Origin: Podarcis erhardii
Lineage: Eukaryota
Length of the DNA stretch: 64,000 nucleotides
Assembly: GCA_964252035.1 (NCBI GenBank)
Contig: OZ176202.1
Reading direction: 5' to 3' (one strand)
Below the pieces are notes generated by a model. That model saw only the letters and a program-made list of their open reading frames with translations, was not told where the DNA came from and did no database searches. The translations under genes and the position numbers were made by a program. Positions 1-24,465 of this stretch are shown here, piece after piece (positions within the stretch are counted from its first letter, which is position 1; every line of letters starts with the position of its first letter).

Positions 1-1161
1 ATCCTTCAAGGGATAAAAACAGCCTAATCAAAATATTTGAAGGTACACACGATATTCCACTTGTTGTACAGACGTTGCAAATAGGCACACAGCACTTCAA
101 AAGCTGTTCCCCAGGTAACTTTGAATGTCCACCACAAATATATTAGAAATTGGTGTGCTTTCTTCATTCAATAAAGCCTTCAGCAGTTAAGTCTTCAGAA
201 ATGCAAATAAATTGTAACGATATTCTTTGGCATGGTTTCATGTGGCCAAGTGGCATTTTCCCCAAATGGTGGAGAACTTTATAGGAAAAATAAAAGTAGC
301 AGCTTGTTACTTCCAAGTTGTTTCCTAAGCCAGACGGAGCAGCGGATTCCCAAAAAAGAGAAAGAAAAGATTAATTTCCTTACCTGTAATTTTGTCTTCT
401 CTGAACAGGAATCCGCTGCTTCGCCAGGACCCACCCAGTGTTGGTTGCTCTCAGCAACTCTTTAGTACTCTGGTTTCCTGGATTTAGTCAATGCCATTCT
501 CATCAGAAGTTTTCTAGTCAGAGAGAGAGAGAATTGCAAATGTACTCTGCCTAGTACACATTTTCCTTGAGAATGTATTCCAGCCAGATGTTTCAAAATT
601 TTGTTTCCTTGGTAACATTCAGACTTTGAGGTTTTGGCTATTGACCTGAAGAAAGACACACCTGAAGTTCCACAGGCCATGATCAGAGTTTGCTACAAAA
701 GCTGGCCAGGAACTTTTCAAACCAGGGGAAAATAAGGACTTTCCCATTGAGAGAAGACATGTAAAGAGGCCAGTTTTTATATCTGTTTATGTCTGTACCA
801 CTACGAGATATGAGTTTTGTGTTAAAGTTCTTTTTTAAAAAAACTTCTTCCTACTTAAGACAGTGTATGTTTTAATTTGTATTGCAAGATCATTTAAACC
901 TTAGAGTATTTTCTAATAAACATTGAAATGCAGTTTGGGAATATTAAAACTCCAGTAAGATTGATGTGAGAGGCCTGTATAAGAGAGACTTGCATAAAGA
1001 ACCTTATAATATAGATATATCTGTTGTGAGCAGGAAAAACAGACTTTTCCAAGAAATCAAAACCATTTAAACATGGGAAGAGAAGGTAGGGAAACTTGGA
1101 TTTGAAAATGTTTAAATAAAAGTTTCTGAGGATGAAAAAGCAGGGACTACAGATGCCCTAC

Positions 1162-1273
1162 CTTTTAACAATGTTCACCACTTCCTGGAAAAGTGCTCTC
1201 TCATCAGCAGCATATTTGACTTCCAATCCTGAGATGCCAGATCTGGTAAGCAAAGGTGCATGTTCTCTGTTAC
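1162..1273 (-). CDS. REV3L: REV3L exon 18 (112 nt), NREHAPLLTRSGISGLEVKYAADERALFQEVVNIVK; last canonical REV3L exon in the window
   Basis: TTTTCAG acceptor, AG|GTAGGG donor; the next canonical exon (YDPDILLGYE...) was not found in 1-1161, so the gene continues off the left edge. Confidence 0.96.
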
Positions 1274-2833
1274 CTGAAAAGCAAATTAAATACTTATTTC
1301 TAGTAAAATACCACCGTGTTGTTGTTTTTAATAAAAAACACACATTAAAATTAAGCCATGATTTTTCATTGTTCAAGTCCCCTGCCACTACTGCTCATTG
1401 CAGACAATGAATAGTTGGTGGTGATTTCGTATTTGAACAAACTGTGGGAAAGCATGCACATGTTTTTGTATTTTATAGAGCTCTGATTTAAGTAATTATC
1501 TTTTGTTCAAGTGTTTATGACCTTTCATCAGCATAAATGTGGTACAATAAAGTGTGGCACCTCTCAAGCTTACTTATAAATTTTGGAGAAAAAGATTTAG
1601 CTTTTACCACTCAACAGAGTGATAATAAATAAAGGCTCTGTCCACACATTATGGTAAACCATACTCAGTGGTTTACAGGGGAACTTTATTTCAGAAAATG
1701 GTTTACCAAGATGTGCAAACCAAGCCAGCCTCATTTGAAATGTGATTCATAAGCAATTTTCTATATTTTTTTCCAATCAGTTCATGAGAGCTTGGCATTT
1801 AAAAGCAACTAACAAATAGATGTTTCAAATGAATGCAATTTTCAGCAGTCCTCAGTTTCTAATATGCTTGATCCAAAGAATGGAAACCTTTTACATCCAC
1901 AACAGTATGACTACTTATGTTTAATGAACATTATAAGAGCTGTGCTATATCACCTTAATCATTCTGCAAATAATTTTTAAAAACTTAATATTTTATGCAG
2001 ACATTTACAACAAGTACAAAATTCTGGTTGCCTCAGGTGTTAGATGCATGGGAGGGCATCTCTTTGAAGTGACACTCAGGCTATGATGGAGAACATTAAG
2101 AGGAGCAGTTGCCATTCACTAAGGTGGCATGGTGGGAAAGGGGCTAACTATGCTGGGATCTGAGAGAGCTGTTCTGTACTCTACTGCCTGTGCATGGGAT
2201 AAGTAGGACCACATCCAATATTCAAACTGTCAAAAATGCATTAGTTATTTGATTCAAACAATAATCAGAATAAATCTTATCACTTAACCATTTCAAATTG
2301 ATGTGAGTTTTAAAAACAGCAAAGCAAGACTGAAAAAGATTAGTGGCCTTAAACCAAAATCTAGACAGGACAATATAGAAGTGATAGATTAACCATAAGC
2401 TATGCATTACTTTATTCACTGATGTATTAAATAAACCAAGGGACTCGAAAAATGCCAGCACTCAATACTAATAAATAAAGAACTCTGCAACATTAAATGG
2501 GGAAATTCTGTGTTTACAATCTAGTCTTATTCATAAATTCTTTTTCAGAATCCGTCAAGTTAGCCTCCAGGAAGTCAGGAAAATTTAGTACAATGATCTA
2601 CTGCTTTAGAAAGTAAAAAATTGAAGAAAGTAAGATAAGAACAGGAAATTAATATTCTTAACATCTAGAAATAAAAGTGGATGAAAGATAAAAGTTTTGT
2701 CATAATGTTAATTTCTTATTTTTCTCAGAACCTTAAAGCTAGGCAGCATGAAGTTGTTTAATGATAAATCATCTCACAGAGTTTAACATTTTACTCTCAA
2801 TATCAAATGTATTTTTTGTTTACTAGCCTAAAC

Positions 2834-3288
2834 CAGTGGTACTCAACCTTTAACAGCTGGAGAGCCACTTCACCATTAACTGTTGTTGCAGAGCATAACA
2901 TCAAGTACCAACATTGCAACCTTGCATCATGATGTTACATTAATTTGTGATGATGTCGTGCCACCACAAATATCATATGTTACAAGACATTTTGTAATCT
3001 TCAGTTTCTATTAGCTGCTGGGAAAAAGAGGGAGGTTTCCCCATTCTCCCCCCATGGCTGCTGGGTTGGAGGCAATTTCTATTCTTACCTGTGGGGAGAT
3101 CCCAGCAGCTCCTTCGCTTTCCTCCTATGGGAGGAGGTACTTCAGTGACTCCCACACTGCCGGTCCTTTGGTCAGTGCTCCCCGCGCTGCCTGATAGAAT
3201 GGAGCGCCGATCAGATGCCTACACTGCGAGAGCCGCCTGTAGGGCCTCAAGAGCATCCGGCTCTAGAGCCACAGGTTGAGTATCACTG
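2834..3288. mobile_element. Non-autonomous hAT (Charlie-like) MITE, 455 bp
   Basis: TIRs CAGTGGTACTCAACCT / AGGTTGAGTATCACTG; 8-bp TSD GCCTAAAC / GTCTAAAC (7 of 8 match). Confidence 0.88.
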
Positions 3289-3817
3289 GTCTAAACAAAG
3301 CCAAAAAGGTACAATACAATAAGGGCCCTGTTTAGACCCTACAAAGATCAGAGAAAACCACACAACAACCCTTATGCAATATTTAACAAAATCAACTTGC
3401 TATTTCTACTAAAATCAATTTTGACAGATTACCAAAGTTGCTGTTCTCGAACAGTCCCGATGCAAACTAAAAGGAACTGGTCCAGCACAAGGGTTTTGAG
3501 CACTTCCTTCTAAGACATGTTTTCCTGTTTATATCTTCTGGACTTCTGCAGGAGCATGCCGTGAAATATTAAACTTTGGTTTAATATATTATTAATTGGT
3601 ATTTAAAAGCATTATAGCCCTTGCAAATGTGCACAGGAAGATATAAGGTAGAAACCATTACTATGCTTCTCATGATTGGACAGTGAGATGACATAAATTT
3701 AAACAACACTAGCAAAGATCCTTCAAAGCCACATTTTCTCATATTGTTCATTAATACCCAAATATGACAACATTCAAACACTGAAGTAAATTCCTAAAAT
3801 AAAATTGAAATAAGAAC

Positions 3818-4016
3818 CTTGGCTTGAGATTGTTCTTGTTCTGTCTTTATCAATCACTATAGCACCAGTGATTTCCATTTTATCAGTATTTGGCAACGGT
3901 GTGTCAGATGATATGCAGTAGAATAGAGCACAGATAGGATCAAATTCAGGATCTGCCTCCAAGTCTCTTCTTGTTCGAGCATGTAACTCTACACTGAGAA
4001 GTGTAAGATGTTGAAC
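3818..4016 (-). CDS. REV3L: REV3L exon 17 (199 nt), VQHLTLLSVELHARTRRDLEADPEFDPICALFYCISSDTPLPNTDKMEITGAIVIDKDRTRTISSQ
   Basis: Start of the degenerate B-family exonuclease-like domain (SVELHARTRRDLxxDPEFDPI); TGTAG acceptor, G|GTTCTT donor. Confidence 0.97.
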
Positions 4017-10098: not shown

Positions 10099-10286
10099 GT
10101 TGTAGATTAATGAGCTACTTTAACCCCATGCAATTCTGGCTCTTGCTTAAGGGAACAGGAAAGAATGCTACATTAAAGCTACACCTAATTTTTCCATGAC
10201 TATATAAATTATGTAAAAGCCAACTAAAAATACATAGGTATAAAATAGAAAAATGTGACTACTGTCCACTGGTATTACCACATTAC

Positions 10287-13200
10287 CTTGGCTTTTCTGG
10301 TGCATCAGAAGGGTTGCTGCAAAATGGTTCCTGATAAATTGCTTCTGCAAGATCGTGATCCAGTAAAGTTGACATAATTTCTTCACGACTTGGAGGTGAC
10401 ATGAGAGGCTTAAGGATGTGAGCAGCACGAGGTGTAGAACTTCCATTTTTTGACTGTGAGGGGGAATTTGTAGATCTAGGTGAACTATCTGGGGTTGGTG
10501 TTAATGCCTCGTTGTTTCTTGAAATATACAGCTCTAAATCTTCAGAAGCTGCATCCATAAGTTCACCATCCGGTGATGATAAAATGGAAGAAAAAGATAT
10601 ACTAATTGAATCAAGTGACTGAACAGGTTCAAAAGTGGCTTCCTTTCTAAAGTGGTTTTGACTCCAATCACTATTTGGCGATGAAAGGTTAAGAAAAATT
10701 CCTTTCTTCACTGCATTTCTCTCCAACTGAAATTGTTCCTTTTGGCACATCTCTGCCTGTTGCACATCTAGTGGTAAGCTAGGTTCAGATGTTGATGTAA
10801 TAATGTTATTTTTCCACTGGCTGTGGAGATGGTTTTCATTCGTATCTGGGCACCTTTTATCAAAAAGCTGAGGACTTAGTGGACCAGATCTTAACCAAGC
10901 TGTGGGGTCTGAAGAATAATGGTTTTCTTCCTTAGAAATTTTGCTATTGTGACTTAAAAGATCCATTTCTGCTGCTTGACCTGGAAAAAGGTCCTGAGTT
11001 ACATCGCTCAGAAACTTCTGTGGTAGATTTTGATCTGCTGGGACGAACTGACTTGCAGAATAAAAGCTGCAAAATCCAGTCTGTCCTATAGTATTAATAT
11101 CAAAATTGTAATTATGATCAGGTGACAGGCTGTCTTCAAGTGAGTAGCAACTTTCAAAACCTGGATCTGAACCAAAAACCGGGCTATCAACAGATAACAC
11201 ATGGCCAGTCTTACTGTTTTGCTGCTTTGCAGAATCTTTTAAAAGCTTGAGATTTTTTTCTTTAGATTTTTTCTCCCTAGATGTACGAGGATTTCTTGGG
11301 GATGCAACTGAACGTGATTTTTTAACTGATTTGTTTTGATCAAGAGGGTAGGAAGCACTTCTGTTCAACTGAGTTTTAAATGATAACTGCTCATGCATGT
11401 TGTTTAGATGTGCTTTTTGTTGCCTTTTTTGAAGTAATTCCTTAAGAACAGCTAAGCCAGAATGTCCTTCACTGAATGCTGAAGGTGTTACCAGTGTCTT
11501 GCCTTTACACTGGGAATCAGCTTTGGTTTGAGACGTTGTTTCTGACAGACCCTTTTGTTTTATATATTTTTCAGGGTTAAAATGTGACATATCCAAAATA
11601 AATCCTCTTTGTTTCTGTTCCCATCCCAGCTTTTTAACCGGACTTCTCAAAGAAGCTACAAAGCATTTTTTTGGCAACTGAAAAGATCCATGGCTTTCCT
11701 CAGAAGTTTTAAAAAAAGAAGAAATATGCTCAGCATTTTTTGTTGATTCTGGAAGATAAACAATCTGCTGCTGATTATCTTTACAATGCAAAAGTTTACT
11801 AGGATGAATCTGATCGATCTTCATTGCGTCTGAAGAAATATAATTTTCATTTACATTTCCAACAGGGGATAAAAGTCTGCACTGCGAATTTGTAACCTCT
11901 TCAGCCTTTTTATGCATTCTATCTTTAGAACTGTATGCATTCAGTGCTACCTGAGATATATGGTGAGACTGGTCAAATAAATTATTTTGAATTGGTTCTT
12001 TTGTCCTAAATATACCACTTTGACTAGTAGCTCTTTGGAAATTCATTTTGGCTTTTTCCTTTCCAGACACCACAGAAGTTATGGCTGGATGATGGTCCTC
12101 CTGTGTCAGGAGGGAACCTTGATATCCTACAGGCTTTTCATTTTCCAAGAGTGAATGGAAATATATCAATGGATTTACTTGTGCATGAGCTGTCAATGGC
12201 AGTTGTGCTGATGGTAGATGCCCTGTTGAACAGCCAGTTGCTTGGATATCTTTTTGGGTACAAAGTGGCTGCGAATTTCCCAAGCTGTGAGCATTCTCAG
12301 GTAAATCATGGTGGTTCAGCACAAGTTTAACCTCAGTTGAAGGAGGAATACTACTTTTTTCATCTGTTACTGTCATCAACTTTGACACTTTTTCTATTTT
12401 TTGTTTTTGTTTTGCTCTAGGCTTTCTCTTCACCTCATTTCCGGTTTTGTTAGTCAGATTATTCCTAATCTTTTTATTAACTCTAACAGTAGTATTAACA
12501 AATTGCTTTTTACATTTTTTAGTCTGAGCTTTCGCTTGACTATGTTTTCCTGTATGGGAATTAACAGTCTTAGTGCTATATGTGGTAGCATTTTTAAACA
12601 CTAATGTTTCTTTTTCTAGATTATTAATAATTTCTTCTGCATTTGGGTCAGTGGGAGACCAACAGCGAGGTGGGGATACATTAACTGGACTTGCACTTCT
12701 TTCTGACAGAAAGCCTAATTTAGACATAACATCGCTATAGTTCAAGTCACAGTCTTCAGCTTCAGTGCTATATGATGGTAGAGGGGGAGACAGAAAGGCA
12801 GAGGTTCTTCTTCTGAAATATAGGGTTCTTTTAATATTTTTACTGTTCATGTTTTGCAGTTTTCCAACCTTTTTCTTGGTTGACTTGCATTTTGCTTTTC
12901 TTTTGTGACCTTTCTTTGGCATTAATGGATAAATAGGATATTTGGTTGCAGGCGAATCAGGAACTTTTGGCCAAAAGTCCTTTAAAGGTGCAAGTTTTTT
13001 ATATAGATTCATTTTTTCCTCTGTAAGTGTAACTTGCTCCTCACTAGAATCTATTTTTCCTAGTTTAACAAGCATATTTTTCCTCCCTCTGAACCTATTT
13101 ATAATAATATATTTTATAATAACAGGTGGTAATTTTTTAGAAAGTTTTCTTCGTTTTCGACATTTTTTTGACCCATCAATATTTTCATCATTTTCCAAAG

Positions 13201-14424
13201 AATGAGGTAGGCTAATTTTTGAATTATGCACACCAAAGCTAGATTCGCTGTCTTCGGTTTCATAATTTATCTTGCGTTTAGCTCTGAGTGTGTATTTATT
13301 TCCACATAGCCCAAACGCCTGCTCAGATTCTCGAGCACCATCGGCTCCATCTTCAAAATGGCAGTCAATACAATTACTTGTATCCATAGACAATTTATTT
13401 TCTGAAGCACCAGGAGAAACTTGAATGATATCATTTGGTAACAAACTGTCTTTATCAGGAATGTTATTATTAGCATTACCTTGTACATAGCAGCTCTCTT
13501 TTGTGGAAGCAATATCGCTGATAGTTGTAGACGGCTGATTGCTAAGAATTACTTTCTTTTTATTTAGTTTTAACCTAGATTGTTTCTTGCCTTTTTTCAA
13601 TTTATATGTAACAGGACTTAATTTTTGTGGCTGACTGAGACAATTAGAAAGAACAACACTAGGAAAGAACATGTAATGCGCTGCTTGTTGATTAACATTT
13701 GTTTTTTCAGCTTTGTGCTCCTGAAATTCTTCATATCTAATTTTAAGGTTATTAAGGCCATCTCCATCAGTGCTACCTTCAGCAGAATAAATACTAGTTC
13801 GATTACTCTCTGAGCAAGACACCATTTCACAGTTTTCTGGTGCTGGGAAGAGGTTATCTGTATTTGTGTTGCTGGCTTTTTTATTTGCTTCATAGGATGC
13901 TTTATTTTTCGAGTGGACCAAATCTGAAAAGTTAGAATTTTGAACCGAAAAACTTTCACCCATTTGGTGGTTCATATGCAGAGATAAATCCTTTGTAGTT
14001 TTTCTTATTCCAGTGTACTTTCTGTGAGGCAAATGTCTACTTACTGAGGAAATGTCTTCATAAACTGTTTCACACGAAGCAGGGAATATTTCACTTTTAT
14101 TACTTTCTGTGTGTGAATTTTCAGAATGGAGAATATTATTGAAGGATGTTGGGTATTTCACATTGTAAGTGCTTTCTTTTGTAAGAGAATGGACTGACAA
14201 TTCAGGTCTTATGTCTCCTTTGTTTGGCTGAGAAAGCCCTTCTAAGTCATCATTGTTCAAAATATGAGAAGAAAGGGCACTTGTGTGTTTACACTGAAAG
14301 GTAATCTTAGCAGAAGAAGCTGGTTCCAGAGTAGCAGCATCTTTATGAAAAATCGAAGACTTTACAGATGTTTTGCTTGTTGCAATTATGGAGGTTCGAG
14401 AATTCTCATTGTTCAACGGATTGT
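10287..14424 (-). CDS. REV3L: REV3L giant exon 13 (4138 nt), NPLNNENSRT...FCSNPSDAPEKP; vertebrate-specific insert
   Basis: Uninterrupted 1394-aa ORF; TTCTAG|AC acceptor, AG|GTAATG donor; contains the basic NEXMIF/AHDC1-like segment ([25 protein letters not shown]) and REV7-binding motif 1. Confidence 0.98.
10391..10408 (-). other. REV3L: REV7 (MAD2L2)-binding motif 1, ILKPLMSPPSREEI
   Basis: PxxxxP core in exon 13, matching the known human RBM1. Confidence 0.88.
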
Positions 14425-16458
14425 CTAGAAAGGGATAGATACAACACATGCATTTTTCACTATTCATCTTTTATTTTTTAAGATCAGCTATTTTAAAGAT
14501 TAGCCAGTCACTTAAGTATTAGGTAAAATAGCAACTGCTAAGAGACCCAATCTCTCTATCTCTTCCTTAATCTTACATTTCCTCTGAAACTCACTTTTGG
14601 TAGTTTTTGGTAGTTTTTCTTATTAGAAAAATACTACACTCAAATATTTTATTGCTGTATTTTTAATCTGGAATTTAGTTACTCCCTACAATCTATATCT
14701 CAAAGACAATTGAAGTCAGGCTTCCCTTGTCTCTTAAGATGCTTTTAAAGTGTGCTACTATGTTTCTGTTTTTCTAGGATTTTATTGCATTATATGGTTT
14801 TCTTGTATTTTTGTTTAATTGTTATATATATGTTTGTTATTGTAATGGCCCAAACCTAGAACATTATTAAGCCAACATGTAGTCACTTACCTTCTTGTAT
14901 TTTTCTCACCAGTTACATTGTGGCGATTAATATTTTTTTCTCCTTACTGCTAGCTTCCACTTAATCCCCGCATCTGACTATTCTACTTGTGCCCGCCCCC
15001 TGCCCCGCACTTCATCTCTGCAGCCACCATAGCACACCTTTATATTCTCCTGTAACAGCTAACCTTTCAGTAGCTACAGATGGATATGGGACAAAGCAGA
15101 CTAGAATACTAAATTTAAAGTTAAAAACAAGGCACTAAAATTGTAGTGAAGCTATTTTTAAGTATTAACAAATAGTAATGCTTGTTTGAAGGATTATTTA
15201 TCAGGCTACACTTAGTTACTTTAAATAGCACTGCATAAACAGGATTATTGCCCCTTTAAGAAGTTAGACATGTAAAACTGCAGTTTTATCCCCTAACCAA
15301 GCATGGCCAGTTACCCTGTCATTTTCTTTCTCCAATTAACACACAACTCCCATCACCTAGGACTTTACATGCAGGCTTCAACTTGGTCCTCATTTCCTTC
15401 GGCCTGGAGTTCTTCACTTCTCTGCAGTCTTCAACCTGGCGCAGCAACAACTGCCACCTCAAGTTTACAATAAGCAGTTGTCACTTGACAGTACCTTTCT
15501 TTTCAGGACTGCCACAGAGCTTTGCTACCTTTTACAATCCCTCCTTACCCAATCACTACAATTTGGGTGAAATTCAACCCTTATTGGTCTGTAATTATGA
15601 GCCAATAAGATGAGGAAGCATGTCTATGATCCAATTAAAACTGGCTACCCTGTTGATGCCTGCGATACTGAATATAAAGCTAGAAACCACTTCAAATATA
15701 GGCATCTTGCCAACACTAGGTTGCAATGACAGTTTAACTGACACTTTGCTGCCTGCTAGTCTTTGATACAATGTATCCCTCTATTCCTGGCAGAAACAAA
15801 AGCAGTTTAGTTCACATACTTCATCTTTTTTGAAATGATAAAATAGCCTATAATTTCACCATGTAAACAATGCAGTTATCTTTTATAAACTGCTTAAAGT
15901 CTGTTTTGGCATTAAGTAGTATACAAATATATGAAATAAATAAATAATGACATGAAAAGTTTGTAATTCTATTTTACCTAGATCAGGAGTTCCCAACATT
16001 ATGGGGCTTGAGGGCACATTTGGAAGCTGATATAGTTGCCATAAAATGGCTGTCATGAGGGGCCTGGCTAGTTGCAAAAAAGTTTAGTGTCTGGTTAGAA
16101 TAAAATAATAATAAAATTGTAGAGTTGGAAGGGATCCTGAGAGTCATCTAGTTTACTATATGTCTTGCATTTGTTTTTATTTGTAACCTACTCTGGAATT
16201 GCAGTTGCAATGAAGAATAGATAATAAATATTTTAAATAAAAATACATTACAGTTTTGTGTCACAGTTTGAAAGTTAGGAAATTTAAACAGATGAATTAA
16301 TGCAGTTTTAAAATTTCAACCTATTTATGTTGAGAATTCTAATTCATAGACTATATTTGCAGAATATTTAGTACAAAGGTATCTATTGAGATATTTTTTT
16401 ATCAAGAAAGGAAGAGTACTTTCTCATGGGTATATGAAATTCCAAAACTATGATTTAC

Positions 16459-22831: not shown

Positions 22832-23166
22832 CCGTATTTTTTGCTCTATAAGACACACATTTTCCCCTCCAAAAATTAAGGGGAAATGTGTGTGCGTCTT
22901 ATGGAGTGAATGCAGGCTCCTTGGCTTCAGCTCCCGCCACACTCCGGAGGCTTTGCGTTGCTTTCGCTGAAGGGTAGGTGCCCCTTCAGCTAAGGCGCAG
23001 CGCCCCTTCAGCTAAGCGGGAGGAGAAATGGAAGGGGCTCAGTTTCTCCTGCTGCTTCACTGAAGGGGCGCTGCACAGAGAGGGGGAGAATTTTTTTTCT
23101 TGTTCTCTCCTTCTAAAGCAAGGTGCGTCGTATGGTCGGGTGCATCCTATAGAGCGAAAAATACGG
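22832..23166 (-). mobile_element. Tc2/pogo-like MITE, 335 bp, in intron 5; inverted relative to the copies at 18615 and 23402
   Basis: TA|CCGTATTTTTTGCTCTATAAGAC ... CCTATAGAGCGAAAAATACGG|TA; its left end is the reverse complement of the right ends of the other two copies. Confidence 0.88.
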
Positions 23167-23401
23167 TAAGTCAGGATGTATTTAAATAAGTGGTTTGTGA
23201 ATGTACCGAAAGGGAGAGACATTCATGTGTTCACAATCATAGAAATATAGGCAAGATTATTTTTTTTTATTGTATTATAAAAAATACAATAATGTATTTT
23301 TTATATTATGTATTTATGTATTTTTATTGTGTTTGATGTTTTATTGTACTTGTATATATATGTGGAGGTGAAGATATCCGTATGCAGCCACATGTGCTTT
23401 A

Positions 23402-24465
23402 CCGTATTTTTTGCCCTATAGGGCGCACCGGCCCATAGAGCGCACCTAGTTTTCAGGGGGGGGGGGGAAATAAGGGAAAAAATATGATTTCCCCCTCCGC
23501 AGCTCTGGGAGCAGCGGGCAGGCTGCACGCAGCCTGTGCGCTACTCAGACCTTCTCCCTGCTTTTGCGGGAGGTGGTGGAATTCCCCTACCTCCCGCAAA
23601 AGCCCACAGGAGCCGTGCGCAACTCCTGCGGGCTTTTCGACCAGGAGGGAGAAGGGACTGAAACGGCCAGTCAGTCCCTTGTCCCTCCTCGGGGGAAAGC
23701 CCCCAAGAGCGGCGCGGTCTTTAAAGGCTGCGCAGCTTCTGCGTGCTTTTGTGGGAGATGGGGGAATTCCCCCATCTCCCGCAAAAGCCCACAGGAGGGA
23801 GAAGGGACTGACTCGGCCAGTCAGTCCCTTCTCCCTCCTTGGGGAAAAGCCCCCAAGAGCGGCGCACTCTTTAAAGGCTGCGCGGCTCCTGCAGGCTTTT
23901 CGACCCAGCTTGTGGGGCTGGCGGTGGGGGGAAGCACTACTTTCCCCCACCGCCAGCCTCCAAACCAGGTCCGGGAGCAGCGCAAAGGCGTTGCACGCCT
24001 TCCTGCTGTCCCCCAAGCCTGTGGGGCTGGCGATGGGGGGAAGCACTGCTTTCCCCCACCGCCAGCCTCCAAACCAGGTCTGGGAGCAGTGCGAAGGTGC
24101 ATGCCTTCCCGCTGCCCCCCCGAGGCTGTGGGACTTGCGATAGGGGGAAGCGCTGCTTTCCTCCACTGCCAGCCTCCAAACCAGGTCTGGGAGCAGCGCA
24201 AAGGCGTCACACGCCTTCCCGCTGCCCCCCAAGCCTGTGGGGCTGGCGGTGGGGGGAAGCGCTGCTTTCCCCCACCACCAGCCTCAAAGAGCAGACTCTC
24301 CTGGCTTCAGCGAAAGCAACGCGAAGCCTCCAGAGCGCAGGCTTCGGAGGCTTTGCGTTGCTATCGCTGAAGCCAAGGAGCCTGCATCCGCCCCGTAGGA
24401 CGCACACACATTTCTCCTTCATTTTTGGAGGGGGAAAAGTGCGTCCTATAGGGCGAAAAATACGG
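23402..24465 (+). mobile_element. Expanded Tc2/pogo-like MITE, 1064 bp, with internal GC-rich tandem repeats
   Basis: TA|CCGTATTTTTTGCCCTATAGGGCGC ... GCGTCCTATAGGGCGAAAAATACGG|TA; about 108-bp units start at 23911, 24020, 24127 and 24236 (partial), plus two copies of another unit at about 23550-23910. Confidence 0.88.

What the first reader, a model, noticed from the sequence alone, without database searches (positions are those of the whole stretch)
330..515. Candidate REV3L poison exon whose 5' splice site sits in the loop of a long RNA stem
Seen: on the sense (minus) strand of intron 18, a 130-nt segment (513-384) has a strong acceptor (TTCTCTCTCTCTCTGACTAG|) and a near-consensus donor (CAG|GTAAGG) followed by a U-rich tract. 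Joined to exon 18 (phase 2) it reads R-KLLMRMALTKSRKPEY-stop, with TAA at 464-462, 78 nt before the exon end; all three frames contain stops. A perfect 13-bp inverted repeat (AGCAGCGGATTCC 338-350 / GGAATCCGCTGCT 408-420) pairs exon with downstream intron. With G-U pairs and two mismatches it extends outward to 330/428, and the donor lies in the roughly 57-nt loop. The arms are CpG-containing in an otherwise CpG-poor intron. Established: premature stops more than 50-55 nt upstream of a junction trigger NMD, and stems around 5' splice sites modulate U1 access. Inference: a structure-gated NMD switch that limits full-length Pol zeta just before the polymerase domain, consistent with the known tight control of REV3L levels. 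I do not know of a description of this element.
Basis: partly seen in the sequence, partly recalled or inferred. Interest (0 to 1): 0.72.

Follow-up and report, generated by a model that had tools for sequence, protein, structure and literature searches.

The report
Deeply conserved REV3L poison exon
A 130-base stretch inside an intron of the DNA-repair polymerase gene REV3L is a real, anciently conserved stop-codon-carrying "poison" exon, better conserved than the neighbouring coding exon, while the hairpin said to gate it is strong only in the window's own lineage.

Summary
Taken alone they are not exceptional. Splice-site pairs of this strength occur about 1-3 times per strand in the window, and about 12 perfect inverted repeats of 13 bp or more with short loops occur in the same 64 kb.

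The decisive evidence is conservation. Orthologous introns from five other vertebrates show that window 321-584 is 81-93% identical across lineages whose introns otherwise do not align. That is higher than coding exon 18 (78-80%).

- The AG acceptor, the CU-rich tract and the donor CAG|GTAAGGAA are invariant.
- Exon length is 130/128/127/130/130 nt, never a multiple of three.
- An in-frame stop lies inside the exon in four of five species.
- Stranded RNA-seq puts sense-strand reads on this exon and on none of the flanking intron. Depth was too low for any junction to be listed.

The poison-exon reading is therefore well supported.

The structure-gating reading is not shown. The stem is very stable in the window (z -3.95) and in one relative (z -7.2). 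It is no better than shuffled sequence in three distant species, and there is almost no covariation.

A second conserved stop-carrying cassette lies in intron 17.

The parts
384..513 (-). Conserved 130-nt cassette ('poison') exon between REV3L exon 18 and the next coding exon
   Evidence: AG and GT boundaries. 81-93% identity in five other species with invariant splice sites. Length 130/128/127/130/130, never a multiple of 3. Sense-strand RNA depth 2.0 (X23) and 0.6 (X24) in bin 403-536, against 0 in the flanking intron.
462..464 (-). In-frame TAA, 17 codons after the exon-18 junction and 78 nt before the exon's 3' end
   Evidence: An in-frame stop is also present in L001 (TAG at the same place) and in L002 and L014 (TGA four codons later). 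None lies inside the exon in L013, where the 127-nt length still shifts the frame.
514..584 (-). Conserved upstream intronic flank: a 25-nt block invariant in all species (560-536, containing a 6-bp mini-palindrome TGTACT/AGTACA), a CU-repeat polypyrimidine tract (533-520) and the acceptor AG (515-514)
   Evidence: Alignment A3. Acceptor matrix score 8.4, similar to real exon 18 at 8.7.
378..386 (-). 5' splice site CAG|GTAAGG, the best-scoring donor on the sense strand of the whole window
   Evidence: score 12.0; the only donor at or above that value on the sense strand. CAG|GTAAGGAA is invariant in all six sequences.
408..428 (-). 5' arm of the hairpin, inside the exon; contains two CpGs
   Evidence: Core identical in L001. 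In L013, L002 and L014 both CpGs read CA.
330..350 (-). 3' arm of the hairpin, in the downstream intron; contains two CpGs that pair with those of the 5' arm
352..370 (-). U-rich tract downstream of the donor. It can pair with the purine-rich 3' end of the exon (inner helices AGAGAAG/CUUUCUCU and AAAAUU/AAUUUU), leaving the 5' splice site in a 13-15-nt apical loop
   Evidence: Consensus fold and single-sequence folds. The columns are invariant, so no covariation information is available.
321..383 (-). Conserved downstream intronic flank (end of the conserved block)
   Evidence: blastn window 584-321 against L002, 82% over 267 nt. Sliding identity against L001 is 84-96% within 300-599 and 42-75% in the surrounding intron.
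1162..1273 (-).
   Evidence: RNA joint 1271->3816 (cut +2), 5 and 3 reads. Translation ...HAPLLTRSGISGLEVKYAADERALFQEVVNIVK(R). Homologous genomic ORFs in other vertebrates.

Best explanation
Window 384-513 (minus strand) is an ancient, selectively maintained unproductive cassette exon of REV3L.

When it is spliced between exon 18 and the next exon it adds 130 nt. This shifts the frame and brings a TAA 17 codons in, just upstream of the exons that encode the polymerase domain. The message then either goes to nonsense-mediated decay or encodes a truncated, polymerase-less protein. Its inclusion level would thus set how much productive Pol zeta mRNA is made.

The exon has a very strong donor and a CU-rich acceptor tract, so it probably needs active repression. 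In the window's lineage a 21-bp, CpG-stabilised hairpin, together with weaker inner A/U helices, encloses the donor and plausibly lowers U1 access.

Shown:
- the sequence anatomy;
- deep conservation with invariant splice sites;
- conserved frame disruption;
- sense-strand RNA on the exon only.

Predicted only: that the hairpin forms.

Inferred: NMD of the included isoform, regulation of Pol zeta dosage, and any gating by the hairpin.
For: Conservation:
- blastn of the intron against orthologous contigs aligns 584-321 at 82% over 267 nt to L002, where coding exon 18 is 76-79%.
- It is 92.6% identical to L001 and 81% to L013 and L014.
- Across about 11 kb shared with L002, only exons and three non-coding blocks align. 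This block is one of the three.
- Against L001 the element is 84-96% identical, exon 18 is 78-88% and the rest of the intron 42-75%.

Exon character:
- The acceptor tract with AG and the donor CAG|GTAAGGAA are invariant.
- Indels occurred but the length stays off-frame (130/128/127/130/130). In-frame stops are present in 4 of 5 species, and the peptide is not conserved.

RNA (two stranded runs, at least 95% and mostly at least 99% alike):
- Depth is 2.0 and 0.6 on bin 403-536, in the same orientation as the REV3L exons.
- Depth is zero over 537-1072 and 1-268.
- The X24 read has only about 80 nt laid with empty neighbouring bins, so it is a split or clipped read.

Hairpin: z = -3.95 in the window and -7.2 in L001. 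Organism D (about 1% diverged) has no change in either arm.

Literature: mouse Rev3l is listed among DNA-damage-response genes with cryptic-exon inclusion in ES cells (PMC10372678).
Against: - No exon-exon junction to or from the candidate was listed. The tool lists a joint only from 3 reads, and depth was 1-3 reads.
- The X23 depth pattern (exactly 2.0 over 403-536) fits one unspliced fragment spanning about 385-536 as well as it fits spliced reads.
- No NMD-inhibition data exist.
- The RNA runs carry a different coded species label (organism A) from the DNA runs that hold the window completely (organism C).
- Mammals and amphibians could not be examined. Two fish-like contigs have an intron 18 too short to hold such an exon.
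- For the hairpin: z is about 0 in L013, L002 and L014. The RNAalifold covariation term is +1.28, with one compensatory pair. 71% of cells pair, and 11 of 21 pairs break in some species.
Confidence: 0.7

Rival explanations
1. The element is a conserved exon-like 'decoy' or exon-definition helper. It engages the spliceosome to slow or detain removal of the long intron 18 (about 9.9 kb in L002), rather than being included in mature mRNA.
For: L005, a transcript-like contig from another species, is spliced across exons 16/17/18 but reads on into intron 18. The X23 reads may be unspliced at the acceptor. Conserved stop-carrying decoy exons are described for SF3B1 (PMC6097662, listed).
Against: No other intron-18 sequence is covered by RNA in either run. 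A 10-kb intron is atypical for retention. Persistent avoidance of a length divisible by three is expected for a poison exon and not needed for a decoy.
Confidence: 0.12
2. The included isoform is the functional product: a stable C-terminally truncated REV3L that lacks the polymerase domain, for example a REV7-binding or regulatory fragment, rather than an NMD substrate.
For: Apparent coverage relative to exon 18 is not negligible (about 0.1-0.4, from 1-3 reads). That would be high for an efficiently degraded isoform.
Against: The 16-20 residue tail is not conserved between lineages, and in L013 there is no stop in the exon at all. Conservation is at nucleotide level and extends into both intron flanks. 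The stop lies more than 55 nt before a junction, with many exons downstream.
Confidence: 0.08
3. The block is a DNA-level conserved non-coding element, such as an enhancer. The splice-like motifs and the few RNA reads are coincidental.
For: Conserved non-coding elements are common in vertebrate introns. RNA support is only a handful of reads.
Against: The boundaries of highest constraint coincide with a complete 3' splice-site tract with AG and with a 9-of-9 donor that is invariant in six sequences. All reads are sense-strand and confined to the element, and the same holds for the sister element in intron 17. Indels never restore the frame.
Confidence: 0.06
4. A chance pseudo-exon next to a chance or transposon-derived (MITE) inverted repeat, with no function.
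For: Equally strong splice-site pairs (3 on the antisense strand) and about 12 comparable inverted repeats occur in the same window.
Against: The element sits at the same intronic position in five other species at 81-93% identity. There is no other copy in the 64-kb window. No Rfam family matches.
Confidence: 0.02

Closest known systems
Ultraconserved poison exons of SR-protein and other RNA-binding-protein genes (Lareau 2007 and Ni 2007, as cited in PMC4379411)
   Same: A cassette exon with a premature stop. Nucleotide-level conservation exceeds that of neighbouring coding exons and extends into both intron flanks. The peptide is not conserved.
   Different: The host gene is a DNA polymerase, not a splicing factor, so simple autoregulation by its own product is unlikely. 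Identity is 81-93% rather than perfect over 200 nt or more. NMD sensitivity was not tested here.
BRD2 exon 3b and BRD3 exon 5b, poison exons controlled by pairs of conserved complementary regions (PMC10789245)
   Same: A conserved cryptic poison exon whose inclusion is proposed to depend on nearby RNA base-pairing. The structure may be lineage-specific and independently acquired.
   Different: In BRD2 and BRD3 the structure was proven by minigene mutagenesis and antisense oligonucleotides, and the complementary regions lie in flanking introns. Here one arm is exonic, the loop holds the donor, nothing has been tested, and the stem is not stable outside one lineage.
[quoted passage not shown]
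   Same: Mutagenic-polymerase genes are held down by inclusion of stop-introducing exons. Rev3l itself is named.
   Different: The position of the mouse Rev3l exon is not given in the text held (no supplement held), so identity with this exon is unknown. The regulator DPPA5A is mammalian and ES-cell specific.
ATM NSE, a nonsense-mediated-decay switch exon in a DNA-damage-response gene (PMC4702124, listed)
   Same: A deep-intronic stop-carrying cassette limits output of a DNA-damage-response gene and depends on 3' splice-site and polypyrimidine-tract recognition.
   Different: NSE is described from human data. No hairpin is involved there.
5' splice-site stem-loops such as MAPT exon 10 and SMN2 exon 7 TSL2 (from general knowledge, not checked here)
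   Same: A local hairpin enclosing or abutting the donor is expected to reduce U1 snRNP access, so that exon inclusion depends on stem stability.
   Different: Those stems are short (6-8 bp) and pair the splice-site bases directly. Here a 21-bp outer stem leaves the donor in an internal or apical loop of 13-57 nt, and functional evidence is lacking.

Membership tests
Poison (AS-NMD) cassette exon | Internal exon with usable 3' and 5' splice sites inside an intron of a coding gene | tested here: met
   CU-rich tract with AG and CAG|GTAAGG. Both are invariant in six sequences from five other species plus the window.
Poison (AS-NMD) cassette exon | Inclusion introduces a premature stop more than 50-55 nt upstream of a later exon junction, or shifts the frame | tested here: met
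   TAA lies 78 nt before the exon end. Length mod 3 is non-zero in all five species, and in-exon stops are present in four of five. The next coding exon (YDPDILLGYE...) was located in L002 about 9 kb downstream.
Poison (AS-NMD) cassette exon | Exon is actually spliced into some transcripts (junction reads) | tested here: inconclusive
   Sense-strand RNA depth is 2.0 and 0.6 on the exon, zero on the flanking intron, and one read is necessarily split or clipped. No joint reached the 3-read listing threshold.
Poison (AS-NMD) cassette exon | Included isoform is stabilised when NMD is blocked | not testable with these tools
   No NMD-inhibited RNA-seq was available, and the single reads call was used.
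Poison (AS-NMD) cassette exon | Nucleotide conservation of exon and flanks without coding constraint (typical of regulated poison exons) | tested here: met
   81-93% identity against 78-80% for exon 18. The tail peptide differs between lineages.
Splice-site-sequestering RNA structure / structure-controlled poison exon | Stable complementary arms that enclose the splice site | tested here: met
   Window: 21 bp with a 13-bp perfect core, MFE -44.9, z -3.95. L001: -51.4, z -7.2. This holds for these two sequences only.
Splice-site-sequestering RNA structure / structure-controlled poison exon | Structure maintained in evolution (stability or compensatory change) | tested here: not met
   z is +0.3, -0.2 and +0.1 in L002, L013 and L014. 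One compensatory pair, covariation term +1.28. 71% of cells pair, and 11 of 21 pairs break in some species. The feature is met within the window's own lineage only, where the arms do not vary.
Splice-site-sequestering RNA structure / structure-controlled poison exon | Breaking and restoring the stem changes exon inclusion | not testable with these tools
   Needs a minigene or antisense-oligonucleotide experiment.
MITE or other multicopy transposon with terminal inverted repeats | Many dispersed copies; insertion absent from orthologous sites of other lineages | tested here: not met
   No second copy in the window. The element is present at the orthologous site in five other species. The only related piece is a 32-37-nt inverted copy of the 3' arm region 3 kb downstream in L002. 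A genome-wide copy count was not possible.
Recursive-splicing exon | The 3' splice site is directly followed by a sequence that rebuilds a 5' splice site after joining to the upstream exon | tested here: not met
   The exon begins AAAACT. Joining to exon 18 (…AAAAG) creates no GT donor.
Known structured RNA gene (snoRNA, miRNA and others) | Match to an Rfam covariance model | tested here: not met
   cmscan of window 1-4000, both strands, E up to 1. The only hit is a chance-level miRNA match at 3517-3658, 27 bits against a gathering score of 140.

The most novel reading that the evidence does not exclude
REV3L carries two ancient stop-introducing cassette exons, one on each side of exon 18. Both are more conserved than the coding exons, and together they act as a dosage rheostat for Pol zeta. 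The downstream one would be controlled by mutually exclusive RNA pairings of the conserved segment just after its donor. That segment would pair either with the exonic arm, giving a local hairpin that hides the donor (kept strong by four paired CpGs in the window's lineage). Or it would pair with a distal complementary box about 3 kb further into the intron, seen in L002, where the local stem has decayed. The distal box keeps window-like bases, which suggests that the strong stem is the ancestral state.
Probability: 0.2. Interest if true: 0.8.

Novelty: new member of a known kind. Interest (0 to 1): 0.62.

Why it matters
REV3L is the catalytic subunit of the mutagenic translesion polymerase zeta. 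Its level is kept very low, and both loss and excess are harmful. How that level is set after transcription is poorly understood.

A stop-carrying exon that selection has preserved better than the adjacent coding exon, across lineages whose introns are otherwise unalignable, is a concrete and testable control point. A sister exon lies in the previous intron.

- The exon can be measured by junction reads.
- It can be blocked or forced with antisense oligonucleotides.
- It can be related to mutagenesis and to cisplatin tolerance.

It also extends the class of highly conserved poison exons beyond RNA-binding proteins. The hairpin is strong in one lineage and decayed in another, with a possible distal replacement. 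That makes it a natural experiment on how RNA structure around a poison exon evolves.

Tried and rejected
- **Earlier scan notes:** nothing near this place or under 'REV3L'.
- **Exon-18 peptide against PDB sequences:** no hit, so exon identity rests on the giant DUF4683 exon, homologous ORFs and RNA joints.
- **Transposon or repeat origin:** arm pattern with 2 mismatches and self-blast of 200-700 against the window found no other copy.
- **Rfam:** nothing meaningful.
- **Protein word search with the antisense ORF 232-462:** no candidate.
- **DNA pattern scans:** two invariant 22-mers against prokaryotic genome contigs gave nothing. The metagenome scan found only the species already held (L007 and L008 are the same species as L002).
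- **L009 (NCBI assembly contig):** exon 18 is not within 10 kb of exon 17, so it is uninformative.
- **L016 and L017 (fish-like):** exon 19 follows exon 17 within about 400-650 nt, so there is no room for the cassette.
- **X1 contigs:** they cover 3-139 and 176-368 only and no exons, so they look like low-coverage DNA and were of no use for expression.
- **Organism D DNA:** about 1% diverged, with two substitutions in 330-515 (369, 465) and none in the arms. It is too close to test covariation.
- **Literature:** searches for a REV3L poison, cryptic or NMD exon at this site found none.
- **Recursive splicing, a coding alternative exon and a chance pseudo-exon** were considered and rejected on sequence and conservation grounds.
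- mammal-like hits P0016-P0019 were not fetched (contigs up to 2.8 kb, too short to reach intron 18, and possibly human). The joined exon-18-plus-cassette model was never sent to a search tool. Its reading frame was only computed locally.

Full report
**Observation.** On the minus strand the 130-nt segment 513..384 is preceded by a CU-repeat tract ending in TAG. It is followed by GTAAGG and a U-rich tract. In the phase left by the upstream exon it reads R-KLLMRMALTKSRKPEY-stop, with TAA at 464-462, 78 nt before the segment's end. Every frame has stops. The inverted repeat 330-350 / 408-428 is 21 nt at 86% complementarity, with a 13-bp perfect core and 57 nt between the arms. The segment 320-440 folds to -44.9 kcal/mol, z = -3.95. 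The window's CpG observed/expected ratio is 0.28. The element's only CpGs are two in each arm, and they pair with each other.

**Gene context.** A 1394-codon open frame at 10283-14467 (minus) corresponds to the giant REV3L exon. Its orthologue in fetched loci carries Pfam DUF4683. Exon 17 (…DPEFDPICALFYC…) ends at about 3818. RNA reads join it to 1273 (joint 1271->3816 with 'cut +2', GT..AG on the minus strand; 5 and 3 reads). Exon 18 is therefore 1273..1162. The next coding exon lies outside the window. In L002 it (YDPDILLGYEVQ…) lies about 9.9 kb after exon 18.

**Chance expectations.** I used a heuristic position-weight matrix whose base frequencies come from memory, so it is only a ranking device. 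With it the candidate donor is the best on the whole sense strand. Only the candidate itself reaches both of its site scores on the sense strand, but three such pairs occur on the antisense strand. Perfect inverted repeats of 13 bp or more with loops of 100 nt or less occur about 12 times in this window. Several are longer (18, 25 and 21 bp). On sequence alone the finding would be a plausible pseudo-exon beside an unremarkable hairpin.

**Comparative evidence (decisive).**
- A word search with the genomic ORF containing exon 18 returned four fragments. A search with the exon-17 ORF returned 24.
- Fetching their contigs gave orthologous introns from several unnamed vertebrates.
  - L001 is a relative whose whole intron still aligns at about 73%.
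  - L013, L002 (the same species as L003, L004, L007 and L008), and L014 and L018 are more distant. Only exons and a few blocks align with them.
- The candidate region aligns in all of them: window 584-321 is 82% identical over 267 nt to L002, 92.6% to L001, and 81% to L013 and L014. Exon 18 is 78-80% to the distant species.
- Along the window/L001 alignment the element is 84-96% identical, exon 18 is 78-88% and the remaining intron is 42-75%.
- Over about 11 kb shared with L002, only coding exons and three non-coding blocks align. This block is one of the three.
- In the multiple alignment the CU-rich tract, the acceptor AG and the donor CAG|GTAAGGAA are invariant. So is a 25-nt block upstream of the tract (560-536).
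- Exon length is 130, 128, 127, 130 and 130 nt. Indels have happened, but the length is never a multiple of three.
- An in-frame stop lies in the exon in four of five species (TAA, TAG, TGA, TGA). The short tail peptide is not conserved.
- This is the signature of a selectively maintained non-coding cassette exon, not of a coding exon or a chance pseudo-exon.
- From exon-17 and exon-18 peptide patterns I infer that L001 belongs with the window's group and the others to more distant amniote lineages.
- Two fish-like contigs have exon 19 within a few hundred bases of exon 17 and cannot hold the cassette.
- Mammal-like hits were not fetched, and no contig was taken for human.

**RNA.** The single reads call laid two stranded bulk RNA-seq runs (X23, X24; coded organism A; reads at least 95% and mostly at least 99% alike) on window 1-4000.
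- REV3L exons are covered only in the 'first mate on +' class.
- In the same class the bin 403-536 has depth 2.0 (X23) and 0.6 (X24), and bin 269-402 has 0.27 (X23).
- The rest of intron 18 (537-1072 and 1-268) has zero in both runs.
- The X24 signal is about 80 nt with empty neighbouring bins. A 151-nt read can only give this if it is split or clipped, which is consistent with a junction at the acceptor.
- The X23 signal fits either spliced reads or one unspliced fragment spanning about 385-536.
- No joint involving the candidate was listed, because the listing threshold is three reads.
- Both runs put their only other sense-strand intronic reads on one more spot, 3083-3350. That spot turned out to be a second conserved cassette (see below).
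- Intronic reads confined to the two conserved elements and absent from about 3.3 kb of other intron argue that these elements are present in processed RNA.
- The tool silently drops human-like reads, so depths are lower bounds.
- Organism D DNA (about 1% diverged) has only two substitutions in 330-515 (369, 465). The arms and the stop are unchanged, which is uninformative at that distance.

**The hairpin.**
- The stem is outstanding in the window (z -3.95) and even more so in L001 (-51.4 kcal/mol, z -7.2). In L001 a G·U pair becomes A-U.
- In L002, L013 and L014 the homologous 120 nt fold no better than shuffles (z +0.30, -0.20, +0.11).
- RNAalifold keeps the same topology but with a positive (unfavourable) covariation term (+1.28) and one compensatory pair, G-C to A-U.
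Seven pairs are invariant, one has a double change and 11 are broken in some species.
- Almost all differences are at the four CpGs, which read CA, TG or TA in the distant species.
- Two inner helices are present in every species: the purine-rich exon end with the U-rich tract, and AAAAUU with AAUUUU. They leave the donor in a 13-15-nt loop. Their columns never vary, so they are untestable.
- The stem is therefore a real, strong, lineage-restricted feature. The exon's conservation does not depend on it, and its gating role is unproven.
- In L002 a 32-37-nt box 3 kb further into the same intron (14103-14139) is complementary (28 of 32) to the conserved segment just after the donor. It retains window-like bases (GGG…CC) that L002's local arm has lost.
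- That hints that the strong stem is ancestral and that a long-range partner may exist in that lineage. I could not test this in other species.

**Alternatives examined.**
- Transposon or MITE: no second copy in the window, and an orthologous single-copy position in five other species.
- Known RNA family: none.
- Recursive-splicing exon: the junction would not rebuild a donor.
- Antisense coding exon: no homologue, and frame-breaking indels.
- Decoy exon or intron detention: one transcript-like contig (L005) reads from spliced exons 16-18 into intron 18, but no intron-18 RNA is seen here.

**Literature.** No paper in the searchable library describes a REV3L poison exon at this position.
- PMC10372678 lists Rev3l among nine DNA-damage-response genes with higher cryptic-exon inclusion in mouse ES cells, without giving the site.
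- PMC10789245 shows experimentally that conserved RNA structures control poison exons in BRD2 and BRD3. It is the closest mechanistic precedent.

**Verdict.** The candidate is a genuine, deeply conserved unproductive cassette exon of REV3L. It is a new member of a known kind. The proposed structural gate is plausible in the window's lineage but unsupported as a conserved mechanism. NMD targeting and an effect on Pol zeta dosage are inferred from the 50-55-nt rule and remain to be shown.

Noticed in passing
window 3020-3386 (minus); cassette 3338 or 3290 .. 3089: A second conserved exon-like element lies in intron 17. It is 87-88% identical over about 370 nt to L002, L010, L013 and L014, more conserved than any coding exon nearby. 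It has two conserved acceptors and the donor CACAG|GTAAGA. In-frame stops follow 2 or 18-25 codons after exon 17 in every species. Sense-strand RNA depth (4.1/1.8 in X23, 1.9/0.5 in X24) is close to exon level. It is probably a sister poison exon.
   Followed up: partly
window 2812-2917: A third conserved non-coding block in intron 17 (83% over 113 nt to L002), with no RNA coverage. An unrelated organism-D contig also matches 2835-2873, so part of it may be repeated elsewhere.
   Followed up: no
L002 14103-14139 (same intron, 3 kb downstream of the cassette): An inverted copy of the segment just after the cassette's donor, 28 of 32 complementary to it. It keeps window-like bases that L002's local arm has lost. 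It is a possible long-range pairing partner or an old inverted duplication. It is not present within 3.3 kb in L001.
   Followed up: partly
window 3810-3820 (exon 17 donor): The constitutive exon-17 donor AAG|GTTCTT is very weak by the heuristic matrix (0.9, against 11.0 for the intron-17 cassette donor). It is conserved as such in L002, L013 and L014. A weak donor upstream of a strong cassette fits regulated competition.
   Followed up: partly
window 543-560 and 444-458 (minus): Two small conserved hairpins. TGTACT-AGGCAG-AGTACA lies in the invariant block upstream of the acceptor. GUUGC-N5-GCAAC lies inside the exon, where the stem is invariant while the loop varies between species (TGAGA, TGAAA, CGAGA, TGAAT).
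   Followed up: no
window 2145-2546: Antisense-orientation RNA reads in run X24 only (depth 0.2-1.4), carrying T>A at 2299. This may be an antisense transcript or a repeat.
   Followed up: no
window about 22960-24420: A very G+C-rich (60-69%) stretch with the most stable predicted folds of the window (to -95 kcal/mol per 121 nt), several perfect inverted repeats, and long overlapping ORFs on both strands (23453-24370). It may be a CpG island or a repeat inside a REV3L intron.
   Followed up: no
L005 1-616: A transcript-like contig from another species is spliced across exons 16/17/18 but continues at least 68 nt into intron 18. This suggests slow or incomplete removal of that intron.
   Followed up: no
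window 3926 and 3978 (exon 17): The RNA runs of organism A differ from the window at G>A (10 of 10 reads in X24) and A>C (11 of 11). These are strain or species differences between the RNA source and the assembled genome.
   Followed up: no
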